A stretch of 64,000 nucleotides of DNA, taken from contig JBLDXI010000032.1 in the NCBI GenBank assembly GCA_047495785.1, positions 2,480,001 through 2,544,000 of the forward strand. The letters are read 5' to 3'. The position numbers and the translations under genes were made by a program. Origin of the DNA: Lepidodermella squamata. Taxonomy: Eukaryota > Animalia > Gastrotricha. Numbering within the stretch: the stretch's first letter is position 1; every line of letters begins with the position of its first letter. Positions 2,712 to 62,646 of the stretch are shown here, one piece after another. The notes beneath the pieces were generated by a model. It was not told the DNA's origin, did no database searches, and saw nothing but the letters and a program-made list of their open reading frames with translations.

Positions 2712-3554
2712 TTACTTTTTGGCCCATTCAACGTGGAGCACCAGGTGGTCATATTTCATACCGTTCAAGACGCGCAAGCACTTTTCAGCTTCGTAATGGC
2801 TGTCGAAGCTGATGTACGCAAAACCGCGAGAGCGCTTCTTGTCGAAGTCCTTCGGAATGTGGATACGTTTGATATGAGCCAAGTCCATTTGTTGAACTAG
2901 CTCGCGTAGATCTTCTTCCGTAGCATTGTCTGTCAAGTTGCTAATACGCAAAGTTGGCAGATCATCGCGAGACGAAAAGTTTCCGATCGCAGAAGCACCC
3001 GGAGCGCGCATAGCACCAGCGCGTGCGCCAGGAGGAACATACGCACCGGGGGTGCCAGCATTGCTAGGAGCGGCAGGAGCGGCTCCGGCTGGCGGCGCTC
3101 CTTTGCCAGAGATATTGGCGATGTCGCTAACAAGCGACCGCAGCGGGCATTTGACACTGTAATGAGGACCTTTGCAGTACTGGCACTTGATGACTTGAGT
3201 CTGTTGACCAATGTTATCGACAGCGCCTCCACCTTCGCCGTCGTCATCGCGATCGTCATGGCCACCGGCTTGGGTGCCGACCACAAATTCCATGCGAACC
3301 TCTTGAAATTCCATGTGAACAGATTCACCGCGTTCAGCGTCGCCAAACTTCTTCCACGAACGACGGGCTAGAACGCCCTTGGGAACTATCTGCTTAACGA
3401 GGCGATACGTTTTTGTCACCTTGTAGCGCTTTCCGTCGCGCTCTTCATATTCGACAACATGCTTCAAGCCAGACTCCTCGTCAATGTCCGTATACCCTTC
3501 TTGTTCGCGCTCAACTTTGTCTGCCCAAGACTGTGAAACAGTTCCGTTCGTCAT
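2712..3554 (-). CDS. EIF3G: Eukaryotic translation initiation factor 3 subunit G, intronless
   Basis: SWAD N-terminus, RRSWKKFGD, zinc knuckle CQYCKGPHYSVKCP, C-terminal RRM (RGFAYISF, YDHLVLHVEWAK). ATG at 3554. Confidence 0.97.
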   Translation of the reverse strand: MTNGTVSQSWADKVEREQEGYTDIDEESGLKHVVEYEERDGKRYKVTKTYRLVKQIVPKGVLARRSWKKFGDAERGESVHMEFQEVRMEFVVGTQAGGHDDRDDDGEGGGAVDNIGQQTQVIKCQYCKGPHYSVKCPLRSLVSDIANISGKGAPPAGAAPAAPSNAGTPGAYVPPGARAGAMRAPGASAIGNFSSRDDLPTLRISNLTDNATEEDLRELVQQMDLAHIKRIHIPKDFDKKRSRGFAYISFDSHYEAEKCLRVLNGMKYDHLVLHVEWAKK

Positions 3555-5251
3555 AATAGAACTCAGGAAGATGTGTAAAAACACGTCAAAATAACCTAGA
3601 ATATAGTCAACATAAATTGATAGATTGTGCAAAGGCTATTCATGTGAACACATTTCTTATGAAATTTCTACTATTACCTAAAACGAACGTAGTTTCAATC
3701 GCCAGGCTGACCTATGAGAGCGACTAATAACACAGAAACTGAATTGGCCAATCGAGAAAACTTAGTGCAACAATTCGAAGTTAGAACATTAGTGCAGGGG
3801 TAGACGGAGTAACCATATGTTAAAAAGATGCTCTTTTGGCCAGAAACCCGAAAAAGTAATGCATCGGTAAATATTCAATTAGAAAAACCAACAAAGGTCG
3901 TGAATCAGAGGCCGTGGTTAATTGCGACGGCTATTCTACATGATTTCATCAGTCTTGTGAGAGACTTAAAGATTGCCTAATGAAGAAGAGCGTTGGCTTT
4001 TCGTAAAATTTCCTTATCCGGCGCGCTGTGCTTTGTCGAGCGTTTTTAGGGCCATTCCAGAGCCTGCTTCGAGGAGCATGTCACAGTAGCCGAAGTGAGA
4101 TTCAATGAACCCGTTGTATAAGTATATGGAATGCCTTCTTCGACCGACTAAAACATGTGCACTCATTGCGGATAGTGGAGCGACGAGTTTCGTCACCCTA
4201 GGCAAGCTCGTCGTTAATTTATAGTAATTTGATGGGTGTGGTCGAAGAAAACAGTTGAGCAAAGGTTCAATTACTAATTAACTGCTAGTTAAGCCTAACC
4301 TAATCGCAACTAGAACCTAAACCACCTACCTCGGTGGATTAGAAACATGCATTTAATACTTACAACTCAGGTTAACTAGTAGTTGATGTTTTAAATATGA
4401 TGATCGACAACCCGACAACATCCACTACAACTACTGACTGTATTATCGGCAATAAAATCATCATCATCATTCAGAGTTAACTGGAGTTAAGCTGCTAGTT
4501 GTTTTTCGATCGCACCGTTGTTTTGCGTGCCGAAACCTTAATTGACTCATTTTTCGAGTTAATCGAGTGGTCCCAGAGCCTCTCCTCTCTCCGCAACGTA
4601 CTTTGTGGGTTGGCAAAAATTAACACAAACATCTGGGAACAGGGCAAAGAAGGGTGTGCGATCAGCTGACAGCTGACAGAGCAGAAAATGCGGATAAAAA
4701 CTGACTGCTGATGCGGTCAGTCACTTTCTTTATATTTTCGCGTGAAGGTCATTTGAACACTACCAAAAAGATATTCCAAAAATGAATACAGAGAATTTTC
4801 AATAAAATTACATGCAACTTTGTAGCAAATATTTTGTAAATAATTAACTGACAAGGTTTTCCATCAAGTTTCATTTTTTTGAATCCGTTTCGAAATCGAG
4901 CCGATCGAGCGAGCCCTCTCCCGCTCTATGACTTCTCAAGGGGAAGCAGGCATCAACCCCCACACCCCACACCCAGGGTAGCAAAAACTGTCCTTCAAAC
5001 TGTCCTCAAATACCCTCCTATTTCCTATTTCCTGTAGATGAAAGGTGAAACGTTTATCCATCCTAGTGTTTCGTGTTTCTGTCACTTTACACCAGGAGGG
5101 TCGAATGTTGACCTAGAAAGTGGAAGAAGCATAAAACAACTCCAGAATTTCTTTCCACGATCAAGTTTTGCCCCTCATCCCTCTTTGTTATCTTTTCATT
5201 TTGTAATATTATCTTATATCTGATCATTTTTTTTATCTGATAGAGGTTAAC

Positions 5252-10301: not shown

Positions 10302-11798
<1,497 letters not shown>

Positions 11799-19561: not shown

Positions 19562-21192
19562 ATGGACGACCAACCTCCCAAGCCTCTCGGTTGTAAGTTC
19601 GAAATAGCTCTCAAAATGTAACGCTTATTTGGTTGATTGGTATACAGTCAAGTTTGGAAAGCGGCATATTCTTGCGCTATGGCTTTTCACCGGTTTCATC
19701 AACGTTTATATCTTGCGAGTTTCGATCAACGTCGCCATTGTCTCCATGGTCAATCAAACAGCAATTGGTGATAATTCGAATCACTCATCAATCGCTACAA
19801 ATGGAACGTGCCCAGTTCCGGAAAAGAAAAATAATACTGCTCCTGCTAAGGATGTAAGGGATCTGCTTTTATAGTAATAGCCATGAATTCGAATGAAATC
19901 GTATTTATTAGGGCGAATTTGTGTGGGACCATCAAACTCAGGGGGTCATTCTGAGTTCTTTCTACTACGGCTACATTTGTACCCAATTCCTCGGCGGCTA
20001 TTTGGCTCGAGCGTTTGGGGCCAAACTTCTCTTCGGCCTCGGGGTCGGTGGCACTGCTGCTCTTACACTTTTTAACCCAGTCGCTGCTGGTGTTAGTTCA
20101 AGTTTTCTCATCGCCATTCGTGTAATCATGGGTGTTTTGGAGGGCGTTACTTTCCCAAGCAGTCACTCATTGAATGGCAACTGGGCCCCGAAGAATGAGC
20201 GAACCTTAATGGTCTCATTCCCGTTATCTGGACCTTTCATCGGAACTGTTATCGCTGCTCCATTGACGGCTCTCTTGTGCGAATATGGTTTTGCCGGAGG
20301 TTGGGCTTCGTCATTCTACGTATTCGGTGGCCTTGGTCTATTCTGGTGTGCTGGTTGGTTTTACTTCATCAGCGATACGCCGGCGAAACATTCGACAATC
20401 ACACCTGAGGAGCGTAAATACATAGAGGAGAACTGTCAATCTTCGAGCGCTCCGGTATCTATCACCTCGTTGCCATGGAAATCAATTCTACTGAGCCCTA
20501 GAGTATGGGCTATAGTCGCAGCCCATACTTGTTTCAACTGGAACTTTTACACGTTGTTGACAGAAATGTCAACTTACCTGCACGATGTCCTCCACATAGA
20601 TTCGACCATCAACGGAGTTGTAACGTCAATTCCTTACATTTGTCTGTTTATCTTTCAAATGATTGCGGCTGGGGTTAGCGACTACGCCCGTAAAAAGGGT
20701 ATAATTTCGACGAAAAATGCGCGCAAAATTTGCTACTCAGGCGGCATGCTATTGTCGGCACTTTTTCTCATAATCATCGGGCAGGTTGGCTGCAATACGC
20801 CAGTTGTAGTTCTACTGCTTTGCCTCTCGGTTGGGTGTCTTGGATTCTCCCAATCAGGGTTCATTGTCAACCATGTGGACATCGCACCGCAATATGCGTC
20901 CATCTTAATGGGTTTTACCAATACCTTTGCGACAGTGCCTGGCATTGTTTCGCCTATTTTAGCCGGTGCTATTACAAATGAAGAGTCGACCATTGCGACA
21001 TGGCAAATCGTTTTCTACATTTCAGCCGGTTTTTCAGTTGCTGGTGCGCTTTTATTCGGCCTTTTAGCGGACGGCGAAGTTCAACCTTGGGCGAAAGTCG
21101 AAGCAGATGTGGAACCAATAGTCGCTAAAAAGGACACGGATGGCCAAACACCGCATTACGGCTCAGATTCCATCAACGATATAGGGCACTGA
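19562..21192 (+). CDS. SLC17/sialin-like transporter, paralog 2
   Basis: Same motifs as paralog 1; two short 5' introns followed by one long exon. Confidence 0.93.
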
Positions 21193-21319
21193 GTTGGTGT
21201 TTCGAGCGGCTGATATTATTTCAACTAGAGTTGTAATTTTTTAATGTCAAAATAATTTTTTTTGTTCATGAATAAATTATTTGTCGCTCCCTTCATAGAC
21301 GTGTTTTTTCGGGTTTTAT

Positions 21320-23007
21320 ATGGAAAAATTGCTGTCCGATGGTAGCTCAACGTCAAATTCTACGAAAAAAGCCAGGATGTCAAATAATAGTATGCTTGAA
21401 GCTGAAAATATTCTGCAATATATAACTAAATTTTGTAAAAGATGTACCTCTGTTCGGAAAAAGGTACACCGTGGCAATTTGGCTTTTCGCCGGTTTCCTG
21501 AACATTTACATCCTCAGAGCTTCAATCAATATAGCTATCGTCACCATGGTTAACAACACTGCAATAGAATCTCGAGTGGATTATAGTAGTGGTAGAGAGG
21601 ATTCATGTCGAAATTCCGATTTAAACACTACAGCCTCTACAACAACAAGAGAGGTATGTTATCAGAGGAGCTTTAAATTTGGCGTTTACTTTATGTCTTT
21701 TAGGGTGAATTTACATGGGATCGGCAGACACAGGGCCTTGTTTTAAGTTCATTTTACTACGGATACATCTGTACTCAGCTCATTGCCGGCGTCTTGGTCC
21801 GAATCGTGGGAGCGCGAATTATGCTGGCTTTTGCGGTCGGAGGCGCAGCTTTCTTTTCCCTGTTCAATCCCTTAGCGGCTCGGCAAAGTCCTGGGTTATT
21901 GATAGCGCTTCGGATTTTAGCCGGTCTCTTTGATGGGATGAGCTTTCCATGCAGTAATTACCTCGTGGCTAATTGGGCACCTAAAGCTGAGAGAACGCGG
22001 ATAGCTTCGTTCCCAACAGCGGGTATGCATTTCCCAATCTTTATTTGATTCAAAACTTTCGGACGAATTTGCTTATTCATTCCTATCTAGGTGGCTTATT
22101 AGGAACAATCATCTCTGGACCACTCACAGCTGTTCTATGCGAATATGGGTTAGATGGTGGGTGGCCGACACCTTTTTACGTTTACGGTACTACGGGTTTG
22201 CTTTGGGTTGCCGGCTGGCTATATTTTGTACGCGATTCGCCCGCTCAACACCCAACAATTACAAGCGAGGAACGAGAATACATCGAGCAAAACACTCAGT
22301 CATCTACTACACCAGTTCGATTCGTTGAAATACCTTGGAAATCAATCGCAAGTAGTACGGCAGTTTGGGCGGTGGCGGTTGCTCATACAACATTCAATTG
22401 GACATTCTACACTATCATAACCAGCTTGCCAATGTATCTTCGCGACGTCTTGCGAATTCATTCCAGCATGAACGGTGTAGTCACGTCATTACCATGGATT
22501 ACGTTGTTCATTTGTTTCGTTTCTGCCGGCGTTTTAGCAGACTTTCTGCGAACAAAATTTGCTACGCGGAATGTGCGAAAAGCATTTGTTGCGTTCGGCA
22601 TGGTTTCTGTTTCAAGCTGTTTAGTCTCGGTGATTCATTTAGGTTGTAATACTGTTGGCGTTATTGTCATTCTTTGCCTTGGTTTCGGCCTTTGCGGCTT
22701 CGTCTTGTCTGGTTACATCGTGAATAACGTCGATATCGCACCTCAATACGCTGGAATTCTCATGGGAATCACCAACACTTTTGCTACGATTCCCGGCATA
22801 ATTTCGCCCATTCTAACCGGGTATATAACCAAGGGCCAATCGAATGCCGAATCTTGGCAGATTGTGTTTTATATCTCAGCAGGAATCGCCATGGGCGGAA
22901 TGTTATTTTTCTCAATATTTGCGAAAGGCGAAGTGCAAACGTGGGCGAAAGTTGTGGAGAAGCCTGGTGATTTGAAGATTTCGAAATTGAGAACTATTAG
23001 TGCGTAA
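21320..23007 (+). CDS. SLC17/sialin-like transporter, paralog 3
   Basis: YILRASINIAIV, SSFYYGYICTQ, WAPKAER, NNVDIAPQYA, GEVQTWA. Confidence 0.92.
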
Positions 23008-31853: not shown

Positions 31854-34800
31854 ATGCTAAGGATTCCCGGCATTGCCAACGGCCGTTTCGGAACCAAATT
31901 CATTCTCAGCACCATTCGGGGCAGCGAAGACACAGTATGTCGCATGCTGGCATCGAAATCCAATGCGGCAGCACCACTCTCGCCCGTGTTGAAGCAGAGC
32001 TTTCTTAGCGGCTCGAATGCTGCCTACGTGGAAGAAATGTACGAGGCGTGGCAGCAGGACCCATCGAAGGTCCACAAATCTTGGGATGCATACTTCCGCG
32101 CCGTCACCAGCGGCGCGCCAGTAGGCACCGAGTATGTTTCGCCATACAATTTGCTAAGCCAACTCGGCCAACAGCAAGTAGCTACGCTGCAACAAATTCT
32201 CTCTGGAGGCGGTGCCCAGTTGGCTCCGAGTGACTCCTTAGCAACTCAGGGCAATATTAGCAAACTGATCAGCGACCACCTTAGCGTTCAAGCAATCATT
32301 CGTTACTACCAGTTGAAGGGTCACCACATCGCTAAATTGGACCCTCTAGGAATTGGAGCCGCAGATTTATGTGACGAAATCCCTGAGGAACTCAAGTTAG
32401 AAACTTACGGCTTCACTGAGAAGGACCTAGATCGTGTTTTTCGCGTTTCTGCGGTCACTACTTACATTGGCGGTGACAATGACGCTGATTTGACGTTGCG
32501 CGAGATTATCGATCGACTCCAAGCTGCTTACTGCCATCATATTGGCGTTGAATTTCTGTCCATCAACAACCGAGACCAGATCAATTGGTTGAAGCAGCGC
32601 TTCGAAAAGCCGAATATTGTGTACAACAGTTTGAAACCCGAGGAAAAGCGTCTGTTGCTGGCTCGACTAATCCGTTCAACCATGTTTGAACAATTTCTGG
32701 CGAAGAAATGGCCGGGTGAGAAGCGATTCGGCCTCGAAGGTTGCGAGGTAATGATTCCGGCGATGAAAACCATAATTGACCGCGCAACTGAGCACGGCGT
32801 CTCCTCGTTTGTTATCGGCATGCCTCATCGGGGTCGACTCAATGTTTTGGCCAACGTTTGCCGCAAACCACTTGAACAACTTTTGTGCCAATTCGACCCG
32901 TATGTTGAGGCGAATGACACTGGCTCTGGTGACGTCAAATATCACTTGGGCATGTCACACGAGCGCATTAACCGACTTACGAACAAGAAAATTAAGCTGG
33001 CTGTTGTCGCGAATCCATCTCACCTCGAAGCCGTTGACCCCGTTGTTCAGGGTAAAACGAAGGCGGAAATGTATTACCGGGGCGATGAACACGGCAAGAC
33101 TGTCATGTCGATCCTACTTCACGGTGACGCTGCCTTCGCCGGCCAGGGCGTCGTCTATGAAACGCTGCATTTGTCCGACTTGCCGCACTACACCACCCAT
33201 GGTACGATTCACATTGTTGTCAACAATCAGATCGGTTTCACGACGGACCCGCGTATGTCGCGCTCGTCCCCCTACTGCACGGATGTGGCGCACGTGTTGA
33301 AGGCGCCGATCTTCCACGTCAACTCGGACGACCCCGAGGCCGTTGAGTACGTGTGCCGCGTCGCGGCTGACTGGCGCTCCACCTTCGGCAAGGACTGCGT
33401 CATCGACTTGGTCTGCTACCGTCGCCACGGCCACAACGAAATGGACGAGCCCATGTACACGCAGCCGCGTATGTACACCGCTATTAAGAAGCACCCCCGC
33501 GTTCTTGACATTTACTCGAAGAAGCTGATCGACGAGGGCGCCGTCACCCAGGAAGAGTACCAAGCTGAGATTCAGAAGTACGAAAATATCTGCGAAGAGG
33601 CGTTCAAGAAATCGAAGAAGAACGCCGCTGTTCGGTGGCGTGATTGGCTGGACTCGCCGTGGTCGTCCTTTTTCGAGACGCGCGATCCGATGAAGTTGCC
33701 GGTGACTGGTGTCGATGAGAGCATTCTCTCTTTGATCGGCACGAAGATGTGCGAGATCCCTGGTGCCGATTTCACCCTGCACCGCGGTCTCGTCAAGGTG
33801 CTTGAGCAGCGCCGTAACATGGTCACGGAGCGCTGGGCTGACTGGGCTATGGCCGAGTCGATGGCGTTCGGCTCGTTGTTGCTCGAAGGTACCCATGTCA
33901 GATTGTCCGGGCAAGACGTCGAGCGCGGTACTTTCTCGCAGCGCCATCACGTTCTTCACGACCAGAAGGTTGACAAACACACTCACGTGCCGTTGAACCA
34001 GCTGACGGAAAAGGCGAAGTACGAAGTTTGCAATTCATCCCTCTCTGAGTTCGCCGTCTTGGGCTTCGAACTCGGCTACTCTATGCAGAGCCCTGACGCT
34101 CTCGTCTTGTGGGAAGCGCAGTTCGGCGACTTTGCCAACAACGCGCAGTGCATCATCGATCAATTTATTTCGTCGGGCCAGTCGAAATGGGTCCGCCAGT
34201 CGAGTATTGTCTTGATGTTGCCGCACGGCTACGAAGGTATGGGCCCTGAGCATTCGTCGGCCCGTTTGGAGCGATACCTTCAATCTTGCGCGGATGATAC
34301 TGATGTCATGTTGAAGATTGATAGCAATTTCGAGATGCAACAGTTGCACGAATGCAACTGGATCGTCGCCAACTGCACGACCCCAGCTAACCACTTCCAT
34401 ATTCTACGCCGTCAGATCCACCTGCCGTTCCGCAAGCCGCTTGTTCTGATGACACCGAAATCGGGTCTCCGCCACAAGGACGTCCGCTCGTCCTTCGATG
34501 ATATGAAAGCGGGCTCGCGCTTCCAGCGTGTCATTGCCGACGACGGACCAGCAAGTCTGCCTGAAAACGCTGCGAATGTGAAGAAGGTCCTGTTCTGCAG
34601 CGGAAAGGTCTACTATGATGTGAAGAAAGAACGTGACGTCAAGAAACTGGACTCGCAAATCGCTCTGATCCGCGTCGAGCAACTCGCCCCCTTCCCCTAT
34701 GACCAAATCCTTGAAGAACTGCGCAGGTACCCGAAGGCTAAGGTCTGCTGGCTTCAGGTTTGTCATTCCGCTTCATCGATGATTCACATTTAAGGATTAC

Positions 34801-40148: not shown

Positions 40149-42285
40149 ATGAAAGAAGCTAAAAAGCGCAAAATCGATTCCAGCGCCGTCAAAGCATCGA
40201 AAGCAGCTGTCGAAGTTTCTGTCAAGAAGCAGGAGGTTGAACTGAATGATGACGATGATTTTGAGGTAGATGGACTGGCGTTAGCTGAACAAGATCGCGA
40301 GTATAAAAGCAGGAATTGCCCTTACCTGGACACGATCAACCGGTTGAGTGACTAATTTTTCAGCATTGCGTTTGAATACGTCTGAATACGTAATTTATAG
40401 GTCACTTCTCGACTTCGACTTTGAAAAACTGTGCACCGTCACGCTCACTCATCTCAATGTCTACGCGTGTCTAGTTTGCGGCAAATATTTTCAGGGCCGA
40501 GGCCCGAAGTCGTACGCTTACATTCACAGCGTTGAGGAGGATCACCACGTGTTTTTGAACTTGGAAACTCATCGCTTCTACTGCTTACCCGATAATTACG
40601 AGATCATCGACTCCAGCTTGGCGGATATCGTTTTCGTACTCAATCCTACATTCACAACAGCCGAAATTTCGCTGCTGGACTCTGAAACGGCGCTAGCGCG
40701 AGCGCACGATTCAACGTTGTACCTTCCTGGTGTTGTCGGTCTCAACAACATCAAAGCCAACGATTACTGCAATGTGATACTCCAGGCTTTCAGCCAGTAG
40801 GTTTTTTCTACAGCGTCTACCATTTTTTAATTTGCAAATCGTTTAAGGAAATTGAAATAATTTTTTGAAATTAAGTCCACTGGGGAGTCTTCCATCCTTT
40901 TTATCTACGATTTTACCGAAGAAACTGAAAATTTACCGGAGAAAACACCGAAAACCCCGATGGAACTGGTTCGGTAATTTTCGGGTTTTACCTGGTTGAA
41001 TCAGATTTTCTCGGATTAGTTTTAATCCCATTCAAAAGAGACACTTGATTACTATTCTTATATGGCATTTTAGATTTGTCTAAGATTTTTCTGGCCATTT
41101 CCTCTCCCAATTTATAGTTTCTGATACCTTTTCTATGCATTACCTTTGTTTGTTTTACATGCTGTAAAACGTACTTTTTGAATCAAATTTTTCTTTTTTT
41201 TACAGTGTTTCTCCTTTGAGAAATTATTTCCTCACCGAGGGCAATTATCGCGCAATTTTGGCGGCTAGACCGCCAGGCGATCAGTTGTACCTGGTTGTCC
41301 AGCGATTCGGCGAGTTGATTCGCAAGCTGTGGAATCCTAGAAATTTCCGTGCTCATGTTTCTCCCCACGAAATGCTTCAAGCAATCGTGCTGTGCAGCAA
41401 AAAGCGATTCCAAATAACTGAACAAGCGGATGCCGTCGATGTTTGTGATTGCTAAAATTCGAGTAATTCATTTAACTAATTATTCAATTTTAACAGTTGC
41501 TGACATGGTTTATCAACGCTTTACATGATGGTTTGGGCGGTGACAAGGGTCGCCTGCCATTACCAGCTGGGAAAAAGTTCAAATCGATCATCGCCAGCAC
41601 GTTCCGCGGTCAGATGCGGGTGTGGTCTCGGAAAATCCCGCCGGAAACCAACACCGAGGAAGAGCGGAGAAAAATGGTGGAATCTGATGCCGAATACGCT
41701 GAAACAGTGAAAGACACGCCGTTCTTTTTCTTGACATGCGAACTACCCGCGCCGCCACTTTATCCTGACGCCATGAAAGAATCCATAATTCCTCAGGTGC
41801 CCCTGGCAACGTTGATGGCCAAGTTCGGTGGAGTTGTTGAACGCGAGTACAAGACACACAAAGAAAATTTCATAAAGCGATATCAATTGCGAAAACTGCC
41901 GCCTTATCTGATCGTGTGCTATAAGCGCTTCAATAAAACGTATTTCGTTCACGAGAAGAACAACACGATTGTCAACTTTCCGATTCGGGATGTCGACTTC
42001 ACGGATTTGTTAGCGCCTGAATGCCGCGGGCAAGGCGAGTATATTTACGACCTGGCTGCTAATATCATTCACGATGGCGAGCCTGGGCCTGGTAAGGGGA
42101 CTTACCGAGTTTTTGTTCTTCACAGAGGCTCTGGCAAATGGTTCGAAATGCAAGATCTCCATGTCCGAGAAATTCTGCCGCAGACGATTCCTCTTTCTGA
42201 ATCGTACATACAGATTTGGTCACGACGTTCTGCCACCGAGTCCAAGGCGAGCGAAGCATCCGCTGCCAAAATGGAACAGTCTTAG
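40149..42285 (+). CDS. USP39: U4/U6.U5 tri-snRNP protein USP39/SAD1, 4 exons
   Basis: CPYLDTINR, LDFDFEKLC zf-UBP, GLNNIKANDYCN, HVSPHEMLQA, EKNNTIVNFP. Confidence 0.97.
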
Positions 42286-51365: not shown

Positions 51366-52073
51366 TCACAATCCTCTCTCAAAGCCCGGAAGTCCATTTC
51401 CAAGAAGAAAATCGTGAATACGACTTGCCGTTTCAATGCGAACATAATTATTCGCAACATCAGCTGAGCCTTGAACCACTCCCACAACTGAGCCGCGGAT
51501 GTTAGCAACTGGTGAGCCGGCAAATCCAGGGTCGGCATATGCGGCAATGGTACCAATCGTTTCGTCCACACTCATCGTGGACACGTGACCAGTCGACGCA
51601 AATATTCCCTCTGAAGTGGGACAAAAGCCGAGAACATAAACTTTATCGCCTAGTCCACAAACACTTCCACCAAATGAGGCAGTCGGTGTTCTAGTTCCAC
51701 GAAAAACGGCTATATCAGGCTTTGGAATATGCGCAGCAGGTGTAGTCGCTGTGGTAGTGGGAGCTGCGACGAACTGAACTGGCTCAGTGAATCCATCGGA
51801 AAAGTATGTAACTTCGAATTCGAAATCGGAGGGTGATCGAAAAGGCGAAGTCAAGACAGATGGGTTATCTAATAAGATGTGACCAGCGGAAAGCAGTAGT
51901 GGACCAGATTTGTGGTACATGAAACAGGACATTGTAGCAACCGCAGAAGTCTTCTTGTCGATTCGACGCAGCTTTCCAACGAACGGCATCATTCGATTCC
52001 ATAGGCTTTTATCCTTATCTTGCTCAATAGATGCAAACGATGAAAACGTTAAATTAAATGCTTTAGTTGCCAT
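51366..52073 (-). CDS. Intronless trypsin-like (Trypsin_2 type) peptidase homolog, nucleophile Ser replaced by Ala
   Basis: LLSAGH (His), PDIAVF (Asp), GDKVYVLGF, DPGFAGSPV, VVGV. Confidence 0.75.
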   Translation of the reverse strand: MATKAFNLTFSSFASIEQDKDKSLWNRMMPFVGKLRRIDKKTSAVATMSCFMYHKSGPLLLSAGHILLDNPSVLTSPFRSPSDFEFEVTYFSDGFTEPVQFVAAPTTTATTPAAHIPKPDIAVFRGTRTPTASFGGSVCGLGDKVYVLGFCPTSEGIFASTGHVSTMSVDETIGTIAAYADPGFAGSPVANIRGSVVGVVQGSADVANNYVRIETASRIHDFLLGNGLPGFERGL

Positions 52074-53868: not shown

Positions 53869-56800
53869 TCAGTTCCAATTGGCGATTCGAGGTCGGGCAT
53901 TCAGAATTTCTGCCTCAACGCTACGTTTCATTGAAAATCTAGCATTGTCCATCGGATCACGATTCCTGACGTCCCTCGCGTAGATATTAGCACCCGCATT
54001 GATCAGCGCTCGAGCCGTCACGCCGTTTCCAGGCCCCCGAAACGCACACATGTGCAACGGCGTCCGCCGCGCGTTGTTCACCGCATTGACATCCGCGCCA
54101 TGTTGCAAAAGCAGCTGTACTATGTCCACATTTCCACTCCCACTAGCGTTGTGAAGCGGCGTTCCACCAGTTTTACCATCCCGAGCTCGAACATTAGCGC
54201 CATGTTGGATCAACAGCTCTGCAACTGCGAAATGTCCGTAATGTGCGGCGAAATGAAGCGGGGTTTGTCGAAACATCGAATCATGCAACTCAGTATTCGC
54301 CCCACGAGCTAGCAACGCCCTAGCCGCTGCTGTCTTACCCTTCTGAGCTGCTATATGAAGAGCCGTTTTGTTATGCTGGCCGAACTCGTTCACAAGAGCT
54401 CGGTTATCAAGCAGCAACGTGACCAAATTCGGGTTGTTCGTTATTGTGGCAATATGTAACGCGGTGTGTTGTTCGGCGTTTTTCAAGGCGGTATTCGCGC
54501 CGTGACGTAGCAAAGCTCGAACAGCCTCGATATGGCCGAGCAGGGTGGCACGATGAATGGCGTAGTCCCGGTTCTGGTCTCGCGTTTCGTTCACGATTCT
54601 TCGCCCATGCTGCGCGACTAGTCTATCGATAGCAGCCACGTCGTTTCGATCGGCGGCTGCGATCAGCTGATTGACGGCTACGTTCAAATCTGCGACGGGT
54701 TGAGCTGGTCCGAGAACAACGACCGGCGTACCGTTTGGCCGATTCGGGGCACGCCGTTGAACGAGAACGGGTGTTTTTGGCGCAGAGACTGTTAGCGTGG
54801 CGAGGGTAGCATTGACGACGGCTAACGGGTCGACAGGGTCCGATGAGCTTTGCTTGGAATTACCGGCCAATCGGGCGGTTTTCTGCCGTTCCAAAGCTGC
54901 TTTGGCTTCGGCCTAAAAATACATTAGAAATTGAGATACATGTTGAATGCTGCGCAATTTAAAGAGGGTCGGTCGATTTTCTCGACTCCTCGATTTCTTA
55001 GACACTCCCAGTTATTTAAAGGTGCAACGATCATCGGCTGTTTGTTCACTTCAAACAAGCTGTTATCCGGTGGATTCAACAGAACGGTCTGATTGCGAAC
55101 TAACTCGACAAAAACTCAGTTGGCCAAGCGACTCATGGCGCTGCCTTTGGTGCCAGCTCGTAAGGTGGCTAATGCGCTCCAGATCATCAAGTATTCTGCT
55201 CCAGCCCAAGATCGTGATCGTTGGTCTCGCTTTCTCGCTTACTTCGAGAGACCTCGTTTTACCACGCTCAGGCCAGCTTTCTGGAGCCGTCTCCACCGTA
55301 GAAATGCGGGCTAACAACCACGTCGAGGGCTGCATTATCGAACAGTTTGTAGCAAGCTAGTTGTGAGAATGAGGTGGAAAATGATCATGAAACATATGTA
55401 TGCAACTACGTCTCTGGTCATTGGTTCAATGTAAACTTTATTCATCGTCTGTCAGTTTTTTCTTTGCCGCGTGTCGGGTTGACAACCGTCACGGTTTCCG
55501 ACCATGCAGCGCTACAATGGCTCGTCTCACATATGGAACCGTCGCAAAAGGATGCAGCGCTGGATTTCGGTTTCGCAAAAATGTAAACGAAAATTGTGTA
55601 GTTAGAAAACTAACAGCTAGTCATTGGCAACTCGAAGACGAGGATAGGCGAACGATAGGTGAGGCGAACGAAGTGAGAGCGGAGAGAACCCACGAAAAAC
55701 CTCTAATTCCTGCGTTTTCTAGCAATACAATTTTCGCGAGTTCCAATTTCAATTTCTATTCAGTTTTCACCAAACAGGCCACTCATCTTGAACAAACTTT
55801 AACACTCGACTTCATCTGAACAAATTACGTCTTTCGACAAGCGGATTGATGTGAATATCCTTTAGACCCTATTAGACCCTTAGAACTTCGAAATGTACTA
55901 TTACGTAGGTATGTAAAACCAATCCATTTCGAAGCTCACCAATCTGGGGTTTCCCCATTGAATAAACCAAGAGTTGAAAAGCCAATAGCAGCTTTCTTTC
56001 AGTGAAACAAGCCAATCACTTATCAACTTACATCGATTCTTTTGATTCTTTCAGCATCCTCGGCAGCTGGGTCAATCCACAGCGAGCATTTCCGGCACTG
56101 GTCGCACGGCTCGCCAGGGTTTCGGGGGTGTTGGCAAAAGTGATCGTATCCAATGAAAGGTTCGCGGCAAACGTAACACATAGTCGCCTTACAGCTGCAT
56201 GTCATTTTATTACAGCCCTCATTTTTCACCAACGGCGTACGGCATTTCGGACACGGTCGAACCAGCTCGGCGGTCATGCGCTCTTCGAAAAGTTGACGAA
56301 TTTTAGTTTCATCTGTCGTTTCCAATTCTTCACAGCTTTTTCCACGATGTTCGGCTGTCCAAGGCTGTTGGCAACGTCGGCAGCTCGCATGTTTGCAAAC
56401 TACACATTCCAGCACTTGAACACTGCTTTCCAACTCGAACACAGTCTGGCACTTGGGGCATCTAAACAAAATAAATAAAAAATCTTAATGCTCTAAATTT
56501 TGAAATTTCACCGAACAATATCAGCAAGATCGGCTTGATTAATGTTGGCCATCGCAATTCTTTCGTCGAGTTTTTCCATCAATTCATTAGGCAGGCGCTG
56601 GGTCAGTACATCTGGACATCAATGATTCATTTTAAATTGTTAAATTTCGAAAAATTGAGCATACTTTGAGAAAAAGGTGCCGTGCATTCATTTTCCATGC
56701 ATTCAAGATAGCCCTTGTGGAAAATAAAATAAAAAATTGCGCAACTTTTCAGTTTCAAATTACCTGTTTAACACCATCTTGGATTTTAGCGTTAACGTAT

Positions 56801-57898
56801 TCAATCAGGCAAGATTGGCAGTAGATGTGTCCTTCGACACAAGTAACAAGCGCATCGACCGTGACTTCATCATCGCATATCAAACAATGCACAGGTTTAC
56901 TCTCCGATTTTGCCGTTCGCAATTTTGCCAACTCAGTAGCAAGACGTGGGTGAGTAACATTTATCGGAACTAACGAAACTTTTCTCACGACTTTCAATAG
57001 CTCGTACTTATTTTCTGAAAAAGAACATAATTAAACAAATCCACCTTAATATTCGCCAATTCACCTCCATTGATTATATGAGTACGCCCCTTCGCTTTTG
57101 TCAAAACCTGATCGAGCCTTCGAGGGTACTGCGGGTGAACAGGGTCAATAGCGCCTAAATTAACATCTTCCTCAGCAAGTTGCGACGAGATCAAACTGAG
57201 TAAAAATGTCCGCGTAGCAGAATACTCTTTGTTATTCAACTTGAAAGCACTTTTGATGGCGTTGACGAAAAACCAACGGAATTCGTTATTCAATAATTGC
57301 ATCGTCTCCGCCTCGTAAACCTCGGGCAGATAATTTGGGTCGTCCATGTCCATGCTATCAGAACAGCCGGGCGAAGTCGTGAATACCGATGATCTCAAGC
57401 CAGGCTCCGCAGTTGCGGGTCGATCCAAGCCCAAATCACCACCTCCCGCCGCGATGGGAAGTAGCGAATTTTCATCAGGCGGATGGAGATTGATTGTTGG
57501 GAATCGGTCTTGTAAATTTTCAATGGCACTCATAGCCCGACGAGGGGCGTGTTTCGGATAATTCGGTGTCATAAATATTCGTTCGAGAATCAATTGAACC
57601 ATTTGGAAAGTTATATCTGGATTGTAATTTTCGTTGGTTTCAACCGGCAAGTCAAGTCCTTCGCTATCATCCAACTCATTTTCGGGTATAGGAGGCGGCA
57701 AAGCTGGGATGTTTAGGAAACGCTTCCGATTAGCAGCCACCTCACTCTGCTGCTTCATGACATCGGCTACTAGAGCGCTTAGAAATTTCCGATTACAATC
57801 TGGAATTACTTCCAGCTAACAATTATACCATTAAAATCAAATCAAATTAAAATTTTGAATTATCTTACCGCCGCATTGAAAATTTGAATAGCGGACAT
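53869..57898 (-). CDS. RNF216/TRIAD3-like RBR E3 ligase fused to C-terminal ankyrin repeats (gene A)
   Basis: ATG 57898; RING1 CLIC..C..GHIYCQSC; IBR; RING2 VKNEGCNKMTC..YDHFCQHPRNPGEPC..CSLWIDP; phase-0 intron 56031-54913 joins RID|AEAK to an exon with about 6-7 ankyrin repeats. Confidence 0.82.
55040..55335 (+). mobile_element. Degenerate Mutator/MULE transposase fragment (intronic)
   Basis: LMALPLVP..RFLAYFE..FWS, then frameshifted RANNHVEG (RTNN..EG motif). Confidence 0.75.
55480..55566 (+). mobile_element. Ty3/gypsy RNase H-like remnant (intronic)
   Basis: TVSDHAALQWL...EPSQ then frameshifted RMQRWI resembles TDHxALxWL..PSxRxxRW. Confidence 0.55.
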
Positions 57899-58557
57899 AG
57901 AGATTAATGCATAAGGTTTAAGTAATGCCTATAATTTAAAAATTGGAAAATGAATGCTATTGCTGAGTTTATTTTATTCCCCACAAGCGACGAGTACCAA
58001 ACAGATAATAAACAAAAATGAACTTGATCAACAAAAGCTGTTCATGATTGATAGCGAATAGACTTTAGAGAAGCGATTTCTGCATTAATTTACTATTTTT
58101 CAACTTTAAATTTACAACTTCATCTCACAAAAATCCCCAAAGTTCCTCGCGGATTGATTTCAAGCACAGAACACGTAAATTATGGCGTCTTGGTCCCGTT
58201 TTGAGCCGGTTAGCTAAGTAATGCCGAAATCGCTTATCGGTCTATACAAAACAGCAACACGAGTTTAGAATAAGCTAATCGACAATTTTCCGAATAAGAA
58301 CAGACGGAACACAATTCGTGTGAAAAATGCTTCTCAACGATAAAAGAAGCAAGCCATTCTCGTTTAAAAGCGCGATTACAAGAATACAGAGTTTCGTTGA
58401 CTGTTATACACGATGTATAAATGCTTGTGTTAGATAAATTGATTAAAATAAGATATCAGATGACTGAAAAACGACTGGATTCATTAGCAGGTATTTCACC
58501 AAAGTACTGGTGCCTCGGTAAGACATTTCCATGACATTGCTTGTTGAGAAAAATTCA

Positions 58558-61500
58558 TCACGACTGTTTAGCACGCTTGTTACTTTTAGAAAAAGAATCG
58601 TCATAATGAGGATCACTGGGTTCAGATCGCTTCAAAGATCCATCGCGATTTTCCTGAGCTTCGCCGAAAAATATATCGATAAGATGTTCTTGTTTTCCGG
58701 CCAGTGCCGAGTCGACAGGGGTATTGCCGAGCGCATCGACCGCCTGGCAATTAGCACCTCGCTCTTTCAGAAGCCTCACAATATCGCCAAAGCCAAAATA
58801 CGCTGCAAGATGTAACGGCGTAGCCCTGCTAGTTTCATCAGTTACGTTGATACTAGCCCCATTGTCGAGCAGGAACCTCACCAATTCGATGTGGCCGTAT
58901 GAACTCGCTAAATGAAGCGGGGTTCGGCCGAATTCGCCTGGAACGTCGATTCCGGCTCCTCGTTGATGTAGTAGCCGGGCAATGTCGAGTTGCCCCAACC
59001 CAGCTGCGTAGTGTAGCGGCGAATTCCGCGCACGGTTACTCGACCAGACTTTACACCCGAAATTCACGAGAGTTTCAACAGCAGGTAAATTCCGAGCCTT
59101 GATGGCTGCATGGAGTATGGAATCGCCCTCTGCATTGATCGCGTCTCTTACAATGAACTGGCCATGTTGAGCTAAAACATCGCGAATGGTTACCAAATCG
59201 CCATCATCAACCGCTTTGAACAATGCTTCGCCGGGTTTTGCGTATTTCCGTTTCGGCAAATCAGCCGAATTCGCTGCCATGGCTGCGGCCACGGGCGGAC
59301 GTGGCGCTTGATTGGACGATAAAATTCGTTGCGCCTGCTGGTTTTGGCGGACGCCATTCATAATTTGACCTGCTGCTGCTGCTCCAGTTCGAGGTGGCTC
59401 GATAACAACGGGCGGCAGTGGCATGTTATTTCGGGTGGGGGGCCTCACGACTTTTTCAGCGGCGGCTTCAAATCGACGCATTGCCTCCTGTCTTTGCATA
59501 GCACCATTAAATTGCAGATCGGCTTGTTCCCTGGCGGAGAGTGCTTGCTGATCAGCTCTTCTAGCCGCCTGCCGCTGAGCCTGGGCGGCTTCAATCCGAG
59601 CCTGGGCTGCTCGAAGCTGGGCTATTTCAGCTTGCCGCGCCGCCATAGCTCGTTCATGGTGCATCCTTGCCATACCAGCTTGCTGAAGAGCCATAGCCTC
59701 GATGTGACGGGCGTGTAGGACTTCTGCCGGTATGTGAGCTCCTCTAGGATGCCGTCCCTGAGCGGCACCGTTCTGTGGAAAGACATGATTGATATTCGGA
59801 AATGGCGCCACACCAGGAACAACGGGTAATACCTGCGGCATCCCGGGCATGCCACCTGGAAATCCGGGCCTTATAGGGAGTCGAACTCCATGTCCCATTA
59901 GGTGGGGTGGGAAGATCACGGGTCCGTGGTTATGTGGCGCAATAAGTGCAGGCGCGGCCGCTGCAGCTAACCGTTTAGCCTTTAGGACGTCCATGTCCTT
60001 CTTATGATCAGCGGCCAGCTTTTCCAGCTCCGATTTGTCAGCTTTACCCAGTTCGACGAGTTTATTGACACGATCCATATCAGCCACATACTTCGCTTCC
60101 GCCTGAAACAGAGTAATAATTAATAATGGATCGTTTCAATGTTCTTCCTTCAAATTATTTGCCCAAAAAATTCTAGATTTCAGGTGCTTGACCTAATCTA
60201 ATTGGCCAGACTTGGGATTAGTCTCAAGCTCAGGTCACAATTTTTTAATCGGCTCAATCGGGTCAAGCTACCTTAATGGCGGGAAGCAGTGATAAATACC
60301 GCAGCAAATTCGAAACTTTGGACAGTTTTACGTCTAGAGTTGAGGAACAGATATTGCTTTTTAACTCTCGCTGAATTCTTTACTGAAATTTGTGATTCAA
60401 ATGCATTTGCTATGCTTGGAAGCTTGAAACCAGATTGAAAACCATTTAAATGGTCAAATATCTAAAACAAACCTCAAGTTCCCCAACAGTAAGGTTGTCT
60501 TGGGCAGCCGGGTCTACCCATAGCTTGCATTTCTTGCACTGACCACATGGCATGCCAGGATTAGTAGGATGATTGCAAAAATGATTGTAATCGATGTTTG
60601 GTTCACGGCAGATGTAACACATTTTACCACCGCATGAACACGTTAGCTTATTGCAACCTTGATTTTTCACCAAAGGCGTTTTGCATTTCGGACATTTCCG
60701 AATTACGGCTTCAGTCATTTTCTCCTCGAGAGCGCGACGCGCTGCAGTTGCATCATTCGACTCGAGTTCTTCACACTTCTTCCCAGCATGCTCAGCCGAC
60801 CACGGAACATGGCAGTGCCGACAACTATGATGCTTACAAGAAGCGCAGGCTAAAACCTGTACTTCAGCTGGCAATTCGAACTGCATCTGGCACTTTGGAC
60901 ACCGGACTAGGTCGTCTATCGAAGCTTGAATGATATTCGAGGCCGCGATACGCTCATCTAAACGAGCTAACAAATCCTCGGGAATGCAACTGGTTAGTAA
61001 TGCTGAAAAAATTGAAATTAAAATGAGATCATTCTAGCAAAATGTGACTTACATCTCGCAAAAGGTGCCTCGCAGTTATTTTCCATGCACTCCAAAAATC
61101 CGTGTTTGACTCCGTCTTGGATTTTATTTTTGACGTAATCAGTCAGGCAGGGATTGCAGAATAAATGCCCCTCGCAGCAAGCGACCATCTTGACAAAATC
61201 AGTCTCGCAAAAACAGCATTGACACTCAAGTTGGCCACCTGAATGGCCGCCGGCTGATGACGACCTGGTTTCCTCATCAACCGATAAACCGCCCATTGCG
61301 ACAAGCGGCTGCTCTGATGATTTAGTCAAGTCATCAGCGCTTTTCGATTTCGCAGCATTGCTTGATGAAGCAACATTTGAATGACTAGCCCCACTGGTAC
61401 TTGGCATGTCGAGGTTTTGCGATTTAACGGGGCTTTCAGGTCTCGGGTCTGGAGGATTATTCGGTCCGGCAGGTGTGTAGCCATTATTAAACAGGTCTTC

Positions 61501-61736
61501 AACTATCATCTGAGACAATTCCCCGACCATTTCCTCGCCCAATTCAACCTGGTCAAAGGGCACATTGCCATCGCCCAACACGCCGGTATTCACCAGCAGC
61601 GTTGAAATTTTGTTTTTCAGGAAGGTAGCATCGCAATCAGGTATAATTTCTGTCTGGGAAAAACGATCAACAGACGTTGAAGATAGAGAATTTTTAAATC
61701 TTTTTCACGTACCACTGCTTTGAAAATAGCAGCCAT
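58558..61736 (-). CDS. RNF216-like RBR E3 ligase with Pro/Ala/Gln linker and C-terminal ankyrin repeats (gene B)
   Basis: ATG 61736; RING1 ECQCCF..CCEGHLFCNPC; IBR; RING2 VKNQGCNKLTC..YNHFCNHP; phase-0 intron 60472-60103 joins ELE|AEAK to an exon with about 5 ankyrin repeats. Confidence 0.85.
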
Positions 61737-61920: not shown

Positions 61921-62646
61921 TCAGTCCATGTCATCAATGTTACAGCCTTCACTCAGTAAGACCGCCAGATCTTTAAAACCGCCCCGTTCAGCGGCTTCGC
62001 TCGGCGTGAGGCCATCGAAGTCGAGCGCGTTTAAATCGGCGCCGTATTCAACGAGTAGCTTCACCACGTCGGCCCGGCCGTAGTAAGCGGCTAGATGAAG
62101 CGCAGTCGCCCCGCTGTAGTCGTCAACGTCATCTAACGAGGCGTTGGATTTGAGTAGTAATTGAGTACAAGCTAATTCGCCGTAAGCGCTTGATAAATGT
62201 AATGGGAATCGGCCTAAATCGCCAGCCATAGATTTTGCACCGCATTTCAGCAACTTATCGACAACTTCAGGGTACCCCCAAGCAGCAGCACAGTGAAGGG
62301 CTGTATTACCCGCATCGTTTCTAATATTTACATCACAACCCGCCGCTACTAATTCTTCGATTGCGGCTGGATTGCAGCATTCGACGGCTTTGAAGAGTCG
62401 GGCGCAAAAATCGAGTTGAGCTTTGCCTGACGAACTGGTTTGAGCTTTCATAACAACTGGTTTCTTTGGATAGCCGTTTTGAAACAGGTCGTCAACGACC
62501 ATTTCAGCAACATGTGGCACAACTTCGGTTGACACGCGGATCGAGTTGAATTGAACGTCGGCAGATTCGATGTAATTGAGCATCTGCAATGTTCTGAGGA
62601 TTTTAGACTGCAAAAAGTCACTTTCACAGTCGGGCAGCAAATGAAA
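61921..62646 (-). CDS. Ankyrin-repeat protein with the RNF216-like N-terminal helical domain and no RBR (gene C); first exon not located
   Basis: LPDCESDFLQSKI..MVVDDLFQNGYP aligns with gene B IPDCDATFLKNKI..MIVEDLFNNGY; followed directly by about 4-5 ankyrin repeats. Confidence 0.8.
   Translation of the reverse strand, partial: FHLLPDCESDFLQSKILRTLQMLNYIESADVQFNSIRVSTEVVPHVAEMVVDDLFQNGYPKKPVVMKAQTSSSGKAQLDFCARLFKAVECCNPAAIEELVAAGCDVNIRNDAGNTALHCAAAWGYPEVVDKLLKCGAKSMAGDLGRFPLHLSSAYGELACTQLLLKSNASLDDVDDYSGATALHLAAYYGRADVVKLLVEYGADLNALDFDGLTPSEAAERGGFKDLAVLLSEGCNIDDMD

What the first reader, a model, noticed from the sequence alone, without database searches (positions are those of the whole stretch)
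53869..61736. Two RNF216/TRIAD3-type RBR E3 ligases fused to C-terminal ankyrin arrays
Seen: the RBR ORFs and ankyrin ORFs look separate in the ORF track. Each RING2 exon ends at a phase-0 donor (ATC GAT|gtaagt at 56031; CTT GAG|gtttgt at 60472), and each ankyrin ORF lacks an ATG start and follows an in-frame acceptor (ttttag|GCC GAA GCC AAA at 54912; tttcag|GCG GAA GCG AAG at 60102). Both exons begin AEAK, which continues the post-RING2 helix of RNF216. The catalytic Cys (GCNK) is intact in both. Known: RNF216 has no ankyrins and regulates TLR/RIPK1/TRAF3 signalling, and the RBR protein ANKIB1 has its ankyrins at the N-terminus. Inference: a lineage-specific RBR-ANK architecture in which diverged ankyrin arrays serve as interchangeable substrate receptors, possibly in innate immunity.
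Basis: partly seen in the sequence, partly recalled or inferred. Interest (0 to 1): 0.88.

Follow-up and report, generated by a model that had tools for sequence, protein, structure and literature searches.

The report
Two RNF216-type ubiquitin ligases with ankyrin tails
Two neighbouring genes of a small-intron animal each splice a complete RNF216-type ubiquitin-ligase core onto a tail of ankyrin repeats, a domain combination found in no other RNF216 relative examined, which makes it a new variant of a well-known enzyme family, not a new kind of system.

Summary
Both genes lie on the minus strand.

- **Splicing:** Contigs of run X1 behave as RNA. They show a poly(A) end, no depth in the large intron, and GT..AG joints. 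They join RING2 to the ankyrin exon exactly where predicted, at 56032|54912 (gene A) and 60473|60102 (gene B).
- **Gene models:** A is 884 aa and its real ATG is at 57898. B is 879 aa.
- **Family:** The IBR-RING2 exons match human RNF216 (7M4M) at E 3e-42 to 5e-45. Other RBRs reach only about 1e-5. All zinc ligands and the GCNK cysteine are present.
- **Junction:** The "AEAK" start of each ankyrin exon aligns with the helix that follows RING2 in canonical RNF216.
- **Purifying selection:** 28 of 32 coding SNPs in gene A are synonymous.
- **Rarity:** None of 246 RNF216-family proteins or 80 metagenome loci carries ankyrins.
- **Relative:** One syntenic relative keeps the gene-A arrangement, with RBR 76% identical and ankyrins 32%. 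Its gene-B counterpart has no ankyrins.

The roles proposed for the ankyrins, substrate receptor and immunity, were not tested. An earlier scan note (s1-379591) describes ligase-less ankyrin paralogues directly upstream.

Verdict: a real, lineage-restricted new architecture of a known family, of moderate interest.

The parts
57869..57898 (-). Gene A exon 1 (ATG at 57898; MSAIQIFNAA)
   Evidence: The joint 57815->57869 (53-nt GT..AG intron) is seen in X1. It is in frame with exon 2 and parallels the gene B N-terminus MAAIFKAV..IPDC.
57065..57815 (-). Gene A exon 2: N-terminal region. It holds a short 'IPDC' motif, a UBA/CUE-like helix (...IFMTPNYPK) and the pre-RBR domain shared with canonical RNF216.
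   Evidence: Model built. The joint 57014->57065 is seen in X1. BLAST to canonical RNF216 extends upstream of RING1. phmmer hits to the pre-RBR region of RNF216 proteins are weak.
56764..57014 (-). Gene A exon 3: RING1 (C3HC4)
   Evidence: Weak Pfam RING hits. It aligns to family RING1. The joint 56712->56763 is seen in X1.
56665..56713 (-). Gene A exon 4 (end of RING1)
   Evidence: Loose end at 56611 in X1 reads CTTTTTCTCAAA on the minus strand. Frame checked.
56512..56611 (-). Gene A exon 5 (RING1-IBR linker helix)
   Evidence: Loose ends at 56611 and 56512 in X1. Frame checked.
56032..56461 (-). Gene A exon 6: IBR + RING2 (catalytic Cys in EGCNKMTC) + RNF216-type zinc insertion HFCQHPRNPGEPCDQCRKCSLW
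   Evidence: phmmer to RNF216 7M4M gives E 3.2e-42. Pfam finds IBR. All 8 listed SNPs in this exon are synonymous.
54913..56031 (-). Gene A intron 6 (1119 nt, GTAAGT..TTTTAG), between RING2 and the ankyrin exon
   Evidence: Skipped in an X1 contig, and X1 depth is zero over 54919-55913, while DNA run X2 covers it.
53869..54912 (-). Gene A exon 7: AEAK helix, a flexible tether of about 60 residues, a 7-repeat ankyrin solenoid, and the stop codon
   Evidence: Pfam Ank E 4e-39. AlphaFold2 gives a helix at 2-15, a low-confidence stretch at 40-73, and an ankyrin stack at 74-340 with pLDDT above 90.
61713..61736 (-). Gene B exon 1 (ATG at 61736; MAAIFKAV)
   Evidence: Sequence only: a phase-0 GTACGT donor and a CCCAG acceptor. 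It parallels gene A exon 1. No reads were laid on it.
61053..61653 (-). Gene B exon 2: IPDC motif, UBA/CUE-like helix (MIVEDLFNNGY), Ser-rich spacer, RING1
   Evidence: Model built. The N-terminus is homologous to the neighbouring ligase-less gene. RING1 aligns to the family.
60473..61002 (-). Gene B exon 3: IBR + RING2 (catalytic Cys in QGCNKLTC) + zinc insertion
   Evidence: phmmer to RNF216 7M4M gives E 5.1e-45. Pfam finds IBR.
60103..60472 (-). Gene B intron between RING2 and the tail (370 nt, GTTTGT..TTTCAG)
   Evidence: The joint 60101->60472 (cut +1) is seen in X1. X1 depth is 0.7-2.5 in the intron against 16-25 in the exons.
59833..60102 (-). Gene B exon 4: AEAK helix and start of the coiled/low-complexity linker
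   Evidence: AEAK aligns with the family's post-RING2 helix.
58558..59772 (-). Gene B exon 5: Ala/Gln/Arg-rich linker, 4-5 ankyrin repeats, and the stop codon
   Evidence: The 60-nt in-frame intron 59773-59832 is seen in X1. Pfam Ank E 7e-30.
57955..58557 (-). Gene B 3' UTR, ending at a poly(A) site
   Evidence: An X1 contig covers 57955-59772 with 22 loose T at 57955.
61921..62640 (-). Neighbouring ligase-less paralogue (gene C): a gene-B-like N-terminus joined directly to ankyrin repeats
Evidence: N-terminus aligned. Its ankyrins are the closest to gene B's (43% over 137 aa). Pfam Ank.

Best explanation
Two tandem, diverged paralogous genes on the minus strand each encode one polypeptide. 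Its order is a short N-terminal UBA/CUE-like module, a complete RNF216/TRIAD3-type RING1-IBR-RING2 core, the family's post-RING2 helix, a flexible linker (about 60 residues in A, about 290 in B), and a C-terminal ankyrin solenoid (7 repeats in A, 4-5 in B). SHOWN: the exon structure and the RBR-to-ankyrin splice in RNA; RNF216 homology with all zinc ligands and the catalytic cysteine; purifying selection on gene A; absence of this architecture from the other family members examined. INFERRED: the proteins work as RBR ligases. RING1 would recruit E2~ubiquitin. Ubiquitin would pass to the RING2 cysteine and then to a lysine, probably building K63-type chains as in RNF216, because the RING2 zinc insertion that sets acceptor-ubiquitin binding is conserved. 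The tethered ankyrin stack would act as the protein-binding receptor that brings a target, or a location, to the catalytic core. The ancestor of A and B most likely already had the intron before AEAK and an ankyrin tail. The ligase-less neighbours would then derive from a B-like gene by loss of the RBR and linker.
For: - RNA joints at both predicted junctions, a poly(A) end, and introns without depth in X1.
- Open, stop-free spliced models of 884 and 879 aa.
- RNF216 7M4M hits at E 3e-42 and 5e-45, against about 1e-5 for parkin, ARIH1 and RNF31.
- Zinc ligands and G-C-N-K are invariant in the alignment.
- AEAK aligns with KEAEEARK-type helices of mollusc, amphioxus and Hydra RNF216.
- In the relative's gene-B orthologue the RING2 end and this helix lie in one uninterrupted ORF.
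- The same phase-0 intron position is found in A, in B and in the relative's gene A.
- In L003 the ankyrin exon starts with TTG, not ATG.
- 28 synonymous against 4 non-synonymous SNPs in gene A.
- A confident ankyrin solenoid behind a low-confidence tether.
- PMC9834252 reports that RNF216's RING2 zinc insertion is needed for acceptor-ubiquitin binding and chain type.
Against: - No biochemical evidence exists for ligase activity, chain type or any ankyrin ligand.
- The RNA evidence comes from assembled contigs of a single run that is only guessed to be RNA. It has one contig per junction and cannot show isoform proportions. Unspliced transcripts would end 2 codons (A) or 9 codons (B) after RING2 and give RBR-only proteins.
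- Gene B's ankyrin exon has an in-frame ATG at codon 9.
- The relative's gene-B orthologue has no ankyrins, so the tail is dispensable or recently acquired for B.
- In other RBRs, flanking domains are often autoinhibitory, not receptors (established knowledge of parkin and ARIH1).
Confidence: 0.7

Rival explanations
1. The ankyrin stack is mainly an intramolecular regulator. It would be autoinhibitory, or relieved by a ligand, and would dock on the RBR core as the Ariadne domain does in ARIH1 or the REP/RING0 elements do in parkin. It would not be a substrate receptor.
For: The long flexible tethers (for A; the low-complexity linker of about 290 residues in B) would let the stack fold back on the core. 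Most characterised RBRs are autoinhibited by flanking domains (established knowledge). RNF216 itself is allosterically regulated by K63 di-ubiquitin (PMC9834252).
Against: The ankyrins diverge far faster than the RBR surface they would have to bind (32% against 76% identity). The relative's gene-B orthologue works without them. The ligase-less paralogues keep the ankyrins without any RBR to regulate.
Confidence: 0.15
2. RBR-only and ankyrin-only products are the main functional units, and the spliced joint is a minor read-through or conjoined transcript of two adjacent genes.
For: Gene B's tail exon has an in-frame ATG at codon 9. The intron-retained forms stop just after RING2. Contigs cannot give isoform ratios. 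In the relative's L002 contig the gene-A ankyrin exon happens to start with ATG.
Against: Gene A's tail exon has no Met before codon 213. The exon starts with the family's own post-RING2 helix. X1 depth is zero or near zero in both introns. L003 has TTG at the same position. No poly(A) loose end lies near either donor.
Confidence: 0.07
3. The ankyrin tails are evolving neutrally as decaying appendages with no present function.
For: Low conservation of the tail between syntenic orthologues (32%). The tail is lost in the relative's gene-B orthologue.
Against: Both tails are long open frames with canonical, confidently folded repeats. Repeat consensus residues are kept, and orthologue-specific motifs such as PGN..TAR are retained. 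The tails are transcribed and spliced.
Confidence: 0.08

Closest known systems
Human RNF216 / TRIAD3 (PDB 7M4M, 7M4N/O, 8EB0)
   Same: The RING1-IBR-RING2 core is shared, with the RNF216-specific zinc insertion after RING2 (HFCQHPR.PG.PC..C..CSLW) and the catalytic Cys in GCN(K/R)M. A helix follows RING2, and UBA/CUE-like modules lie N-terminal to the core. Hits are E 3e-42 to 5e-45.
   Different: RNF216 and all 246 relatives examined end in a short or disordered tail without ankyrin repeats. Here a 4-7 repeat ankyrin solenoid is tethered to the C-terminus.
ANKIB1 (the RBR ligase with ankyrin repeats)
   Same: It is an RBR ligase that also carries ankyrin repeats.
   Different: In ANKIB1 the ankyrins are N-terminal and the RBR is Ariadne-type (established knowledge). 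Here the ankyrins are C-terminal, and the RBR matches RNF216 about 40 orders of magnitude better than it matches Ariadne or parkin.
Other ankyrin-bearing E3 ligases (MIB1/2, HACE1, ASB-SOCS adaptors, plant XBAT)
   Same: The general logic is the same: an ankyrin array serves as the target-binding part of a ubiquitin ligase (established knowledge).
   Different: The catalytic modules differ (RING, HECT, cullin adaptor). None has an RNF216-type RBR.
Ligase-less N-terminus + ankyrin paralogues directly upstream (earlier scan note s1-379591; gene C at 61921-62640)
   Same: They share the N-terminal IPDC / ..DLFxNGY module with gene B, and their ankyrins are the closest to gene B's (43%).
   Different: They lack the RBR core and the linker, so they cannot transfer ubiquitin themselves.
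RRM + Rcat_RNF216 proteins of Meloidogyne (P0206, P0224), and the RRM-RNF216 gene noted elsewhere in this genome (s1-387794)
   Same: They show that the RNF216 catalytic cassette has been recombined with other binding domains.
   Different: The added domain is an N-terminal RNA-recognition motif, not C-terminal ankyrins.

Membership tests
RBR (RING-between-RING) E3 ligases | RING1, IBR and RING2 in that order, with complete zinc ligands | tested here: met
   Pfam finds RING and IBR x2. All Cys/His columns that are invariant in 100 family members are present in both genes.
RBR (RING-between-RING) E3 ligases | Catalytic cysteine in RING2 | tested here: met
   EGCNKMTC (A) and QGCNKLTC (B) align with human EGCNRMSC.
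RBR (RING-between-RING) E3 ligases | E2~Ub transthiolation activity | not testable with these tools
   Needs a biochemical assay.
RNF216/TRIAD3 subfamily | RBR closer to RNF216 than to any other RBR subfamily | tested here: met
   7M4M hits at E 5e-45 and 3e-42, against 6e-5 to 1e-5 for parkin and ARIH1. Orthologues in L001-L004 carry the precomputed Pfam families RING-HC_RBR_RNF216 and Rcat_RNF216.
RNF216/TRIAD3 subfamily | Zinc-finger insertion in the C-terminal half of RING2 (the acceptor-ubiquitin site) | tested here: met
   HFCQHPRNPGEPCDQCRKCSLW (A) and HFCNHPTNPGMPCGQCKKCKLW (B) align without gaps to the human sequence. The role of the insertion is taken from PMC9834252.
RNF216/TRIAD3 subfamily | Helix following RING2 | tested here: met
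   It aligns with the family, and AlphaFold2 predicts a helix at residues 2-15 of the tail exon. A phmmer search with the short piece alone against PDB found nothing.
RNF216/TRIAD3 subfamily | N-terminal UBA/CUE-like module(s) (Pfam UBA_RNF216) | tested here: inconclusive
   The local Pfam copy gave no hit. Gene A's pre-RBR region aligns with canonical RNF216. The short ..LFxNGYP helix gives only weak hits.
RNF216/TRIAD3 subfamily | K63-linked chain formation | not testable with these tools
   Needs a biochemical assay.
ANKIB1 | N-terminal ankyrins with an Ariadne-type RBR | tested here: not met
   The ankyrins are C-terminal, and the RBR is RNF216-type.

The most novel reading that the evidence does not exclude
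The cluster (two RBR-ankyrin ligases plus several ligase-less N-terminus-ankyrin paralogues) is a fast-evolving, modular recognition system. Diversifying ankyrin receptors would recognise changing targets such as pathogen or selfish-element proteins. The RNF216 core would tag those targets, and the ligase-less copies would act as decoys, competitors or adaptors. This would be an invertebrate immune or conflict locus built on an RBR ligase.
Probability: 0.12. Interest if true: 0.8.

Novelty: new variant of a known kind. Interest (0 to 1): 0.45.

Why it matters
RBR ligases are a small, intensively studied family (14 in humans). How each finds its targets is largely open, and for RNF216 (Gordon Holmes syndrome) substrate recognition is poorly understood. 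A natural RNF216 core with a tethered, exchangeable ankyrin receptor sits here beside paralogues that keep the receptor but have lost the ligase. That gives a ready-made comparative system for asking how a receptor domain redirects an RBR core. It is also an example of exon-level domain accretion at a conserved intron. It does not reveal a new mechanism.

Tried and rejected
- **PDB search with the tail starts alone:** the first 40-60 residues of the tail exons gave no RNF216 hit because the pieces are too short. The family alignment settled the question instead.
- **Atlas search with the gene B tail and word-index protein search with the same exon:** both returned only generic ankyrin proteins. 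They say nothing about the architecture.
- **Pfam scan of the 100-protein alignment:** It was replaced by phmmer with the window's ankyrin domains against all 246 family proteins. There were no hits, and the positive control worked.
- **JGI metagenome scan:** it found only distant RNF216-like loci (46% identity or less). The one locus with same-strand ankyrins downstream (L031) has a Ras-like gene on the opposite strand in between, so it was rejected as a fusion.
- **Naming the organism through its OGDH gene:** the best identities are only 59-66%, spread over molluscs, annelids, insects and a nematode, so the phylum stays open.
- **Terminal repeats in gene A's large intron:** no clear transposon ends were found.
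- **Folding the full fused protein:** not possible.
Full report
**1. What is in the sequence**

The region holds two minus-strand genes with very short introns of 50-60 nt and (T)TTCAG/TTTTAG acceptors.

- Pfam finds IBR/RING2 domains in 56023-56469 and 60446-60973. It finds a weak RING1 in 56758-56997.
- Pfam finds strong ankyrin repeats in 53872-54912 (E 4e-39) and 58561-60102 (E 7e-30).
- A third ORF at 61924-62640 also carries ankyrin repeats.

**2. RNA evidence**

Only two public runs hold this DNA. X2 covers exons and introns alike and behaves as DNA. X1 is labelled only as 'RNA?', but it behaves as RNA when laid on 54720-60680:

- It has no depth over 54919-55913.
- Depth is 0.7-2.5 in 60093-60490, against 16-25 in the flanking exons.
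- One contig ends in 22 loose T at 57955, which is a poly(A) tail on the minus strand.
- Every joint but one has CT..AC ends, which is GT..AG on the minus strand.

- **Gene A:** 54911->56032 with one substituted letter. This means intron 54913-56031 plus a G>A SNP at the first exon base.
- **Gene B:** 60101->60472 (cut +1), which means intron 60103-60472.

Other joints and loose ends define the remaining introns of gene A (50, 50, 53 and 50 nt). They also show a 60-nt in-frame intron inside gene B's linker and a 53-nt intron upstream of the ATG I first assumed for gene A.

The evidence has limits. It comes from assembled contigs with one contig per junction, so isoform proportions are unknown.

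**3. Gene models**

- **Gene A:** with the X1 joints, gene A is 57898-57869, 57815-57065, 57014-56764, 56713-56665, 56611-56512, 56461-56032 and 54912-53869. That gives 884 aa with no internal stop.
- **Gene A start:** It parallels gene B's start (MAAIFKAV|TEIIPDC...).
- **Gene B:** gene B is 61736-61713, 61653-61053, 61002-60473, 60102-59833 and 59772-58558, giving 879 aa. Its first intron was not covered by reads.
- **Junctions:** the RBR|tail junctions fall at residues 537/538 (A) and 385/386 (B).
- **Unspliced forms:** reading through the donors gives stops after 2 codons (A) and 9 codons (B).
- **Internal starts:** gene A's tail exon has no Met before codon 213.

**4. Family**

- The IBR-RING2 exons hit human RNF216 (7M4M/8EB0) at E 5e-45 (B) and 3e-42 (A). 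The alignment runs without gaps through the RNF216-specific zinc insertion after RING2.
- Parkin, ARIH1 and RNF31 score only 1e-5 to 1e-3.
- All Cys/His ligands and G-C-N-K are conserved.
- According to PMC9834252, that zinc insertion is needed for acceptor-ubiquitin binding and chain type, and RNF216 is activated by K63 di-ubiquitin.
- A and B are old paralogues. Their RBRs are 55% identical and their ankyrins 30-42%.

**5. Is the tail exon part of the ligase?**

Searched alone, the first 40-60 residues of the tail exons find nothing in PDB. Aligned with family members, however, 'AEAK...' falls on the helix that follows RING2 in mollusc, amphioxus, Hydra and sea-anemone RNF216 (KEAEEARK, QEAEKERM, KAAREQKK). 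BLAST alignments of gene A to canonical RNF216 also run up to 20 residues past the junction.

AlphaFold2 was run on gene A's last exon (mean pLDDT 84).

| Residues of the exon | Prediction |
|---|---|
| 2-15 | helix |
| 40-73 | low-confidence tether |
| 74-340 | ankyrin solenoid, pLDDT above 90, seven repeats plus a cap |

**6. Population evidence**

Gene A differs from the X1/X2 alleles at many sites. Of 32 coding differences listed, 28 are synonymous and 4 are not. None of the non-synonymous changes is in RING1, IBR or RING2. This supports the reading frame and indicates purifying selection. Only about 190 nt of the ankyrin exon was covered (1 synonymous, 2 non-synonymous), which is too little to judge the tail.

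**7. Relatives**

*Family-wide searches*

- A full HMMER scan of 1.84 billion representatives with gene B's IBR-RING2 exon found 3699 relatives. None of the best 150 contains ankyrin repeats by phmmer. The positive control worked.
- A second search listed 120 of the 124 RNF216-family proteins of 381-1213 aa that it found, from animals, fungi, plants and protists, with precomputed Pfam domains. None has an Ank family. Other additions seen are CUE and, in Meloidogyne, an RRM.
- Eighty RNF216-like loci from JGI metagenomes show no downstream fused ankyrins.

*The one close relative*

The only close relatives are metagenome contigs L001-L004. They are syntenic, in this order: a canonical RNF216-like gene (P0003), an ankyrin gene, the gene-B orthologue (P0002), and the gene-A orthologue (P0001) followed by an ankyrin ORF.

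- **Gene-A orthologue:** it has an intron at the same codon position (RIN|..AAQAELDKAKK). The donor is a GCAAGT (GC-AG) site and the intron is 97 nt.
- **Start of its tail exon:** the exon starts with ATG in L002 but with TTG in L003. This argues against independent initiation.
- **Divergence:** its RBR is 76% identical to gene A's, but its ankyrins are only 32% identical, although they are reciprocal best matches.
- **Gene-B orthologue:** RING2, the helix and a 276-aa coiled/Pro-rich tail lie in one uninterrupted ORF that ends without ankyrins. Gene A's first exon follows 250 nt later. The helix therefore belongs to the ligase, but B's ankyrins are not conserved.

*Caveats*

- Many database entries are unspliced ORF fragments. 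P0001 and P0002 both run into introns.
- No close relative of this animal has an annotated proteome in the databases. Its OGDH is at most 66% identical to anything.

**8. Origin**

The intron before AEAK is shared by A, B and the relative's A, so it most likely predates the A/B duplication.

Gene B's ankyrins are closest to those of the adjacent ligase-less gene C (43% over 137 aa). Gene C's N-terminus is homologous to B's. A gain of ankyrins by B from such a neighbour is not excluded, given the relative's ankyrin-less B.

**9. Mechanism**

*Inferred from RBR and RNF216 biochemistry (PMC9834252):* RING1 binds E2~Ub, ubiquitin passes to the RING2 cysteine, and then to a lysine, probably forming K63-type chains.

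*Most likely role of the tail:* the tethered ankyrin stack is a protein-binding receptor that selects the target or the place of action. I give about 0.5 to the receptor role itself and about 0.9 to the fused architecture.

*Rivals:*
- An autoinhibitory or regulatory tail.
- Mainly separate RBR-only and ankyrin-only products.
- A decaying appendage.

Nothing here tests a link to innate immunity.

**10. Verdict**

This is a new domain architecture within a known family (RNF216-type RBR), and its logic of ankyrins on an E3 ligase is familiar from ANKIB1, MIB, HACE1 and ASB proteins. Interest is moderate.

Noticed in passing
window 57898-57955 (minus strand): Gene B's poly(A) site (57955) lies only 57 nt upstream of gene A's start codon (57898), and a TTATAG acceptor-like site lies in between. 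This spacing is operon-like and could mean co-transcription with trans-splicing.
   Followed up: no
window 54913-56031: Gene A's large intron looks structurally polymorphic or repeat-bearing in DNA run X2. There are loose ends at 55013, 55047, 55859 and 55949-55953, and depth swings from 64 to 249 against about 106 nearby. No clear terminal repeats were found, and there is no other copy in the window.
   Followed up: partly
window 56032-57898 versus 57955-59772: Gene A carries many allelic differences in both runs, with some contigs only 90-99% alike and roughly half depth in X2, nearly all of them synonymous. A 1.8-kb X1 contig over gene B has none. The two adjacent genes therefore differ sharply in heterozygosity.
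   Followed up: partly
window 59773-59832: A 60-nt in-frame intron sits inside gene B's Pro/Gly-rich linker. Retaining it would add 20 residues (VLPVVPGVAPFPNINHVFPQ) without breaking the frame, so two isoforms are possible.
   Followed up: no
L002 9833-9929 and L003 9281-9375: In the related species, the intron between RING2 and the ankyrin exon appears to use a GC-AG donor (AAT|GCAAGT). There is no RNA evidence for that species.
   Followed up: no
L002 1631-3408: The relative's cluster starts with a third, canonical RNF216-like gene (P0003, 386-aa ORF, with a weak UBA_RNF216 hit upstream) that has no ankyrins. Whether this genome has the counterpart beyond the window end is unknown.
   Followed up: no
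proteins P0206, P0224, P0239: RRM + Rcat_RNF216 proteins exist in Meloidogyne. The RNF216 catalytic cassette therefore seems prone to recombination with binding domains.
   Followed up: no
window 31854-34793, 41497-42285, 51366-52073, 2712-3632, 10302-11567, 19921-23007: The rest of the window holds ordinary animal genes: OGDH E1 as a single 979-aa exon, a USP-type deubiquitinase fragment, a trypsin-like peptidase, eIF3g, a protein kinase and two MFS transporters.
   Followed up: partly
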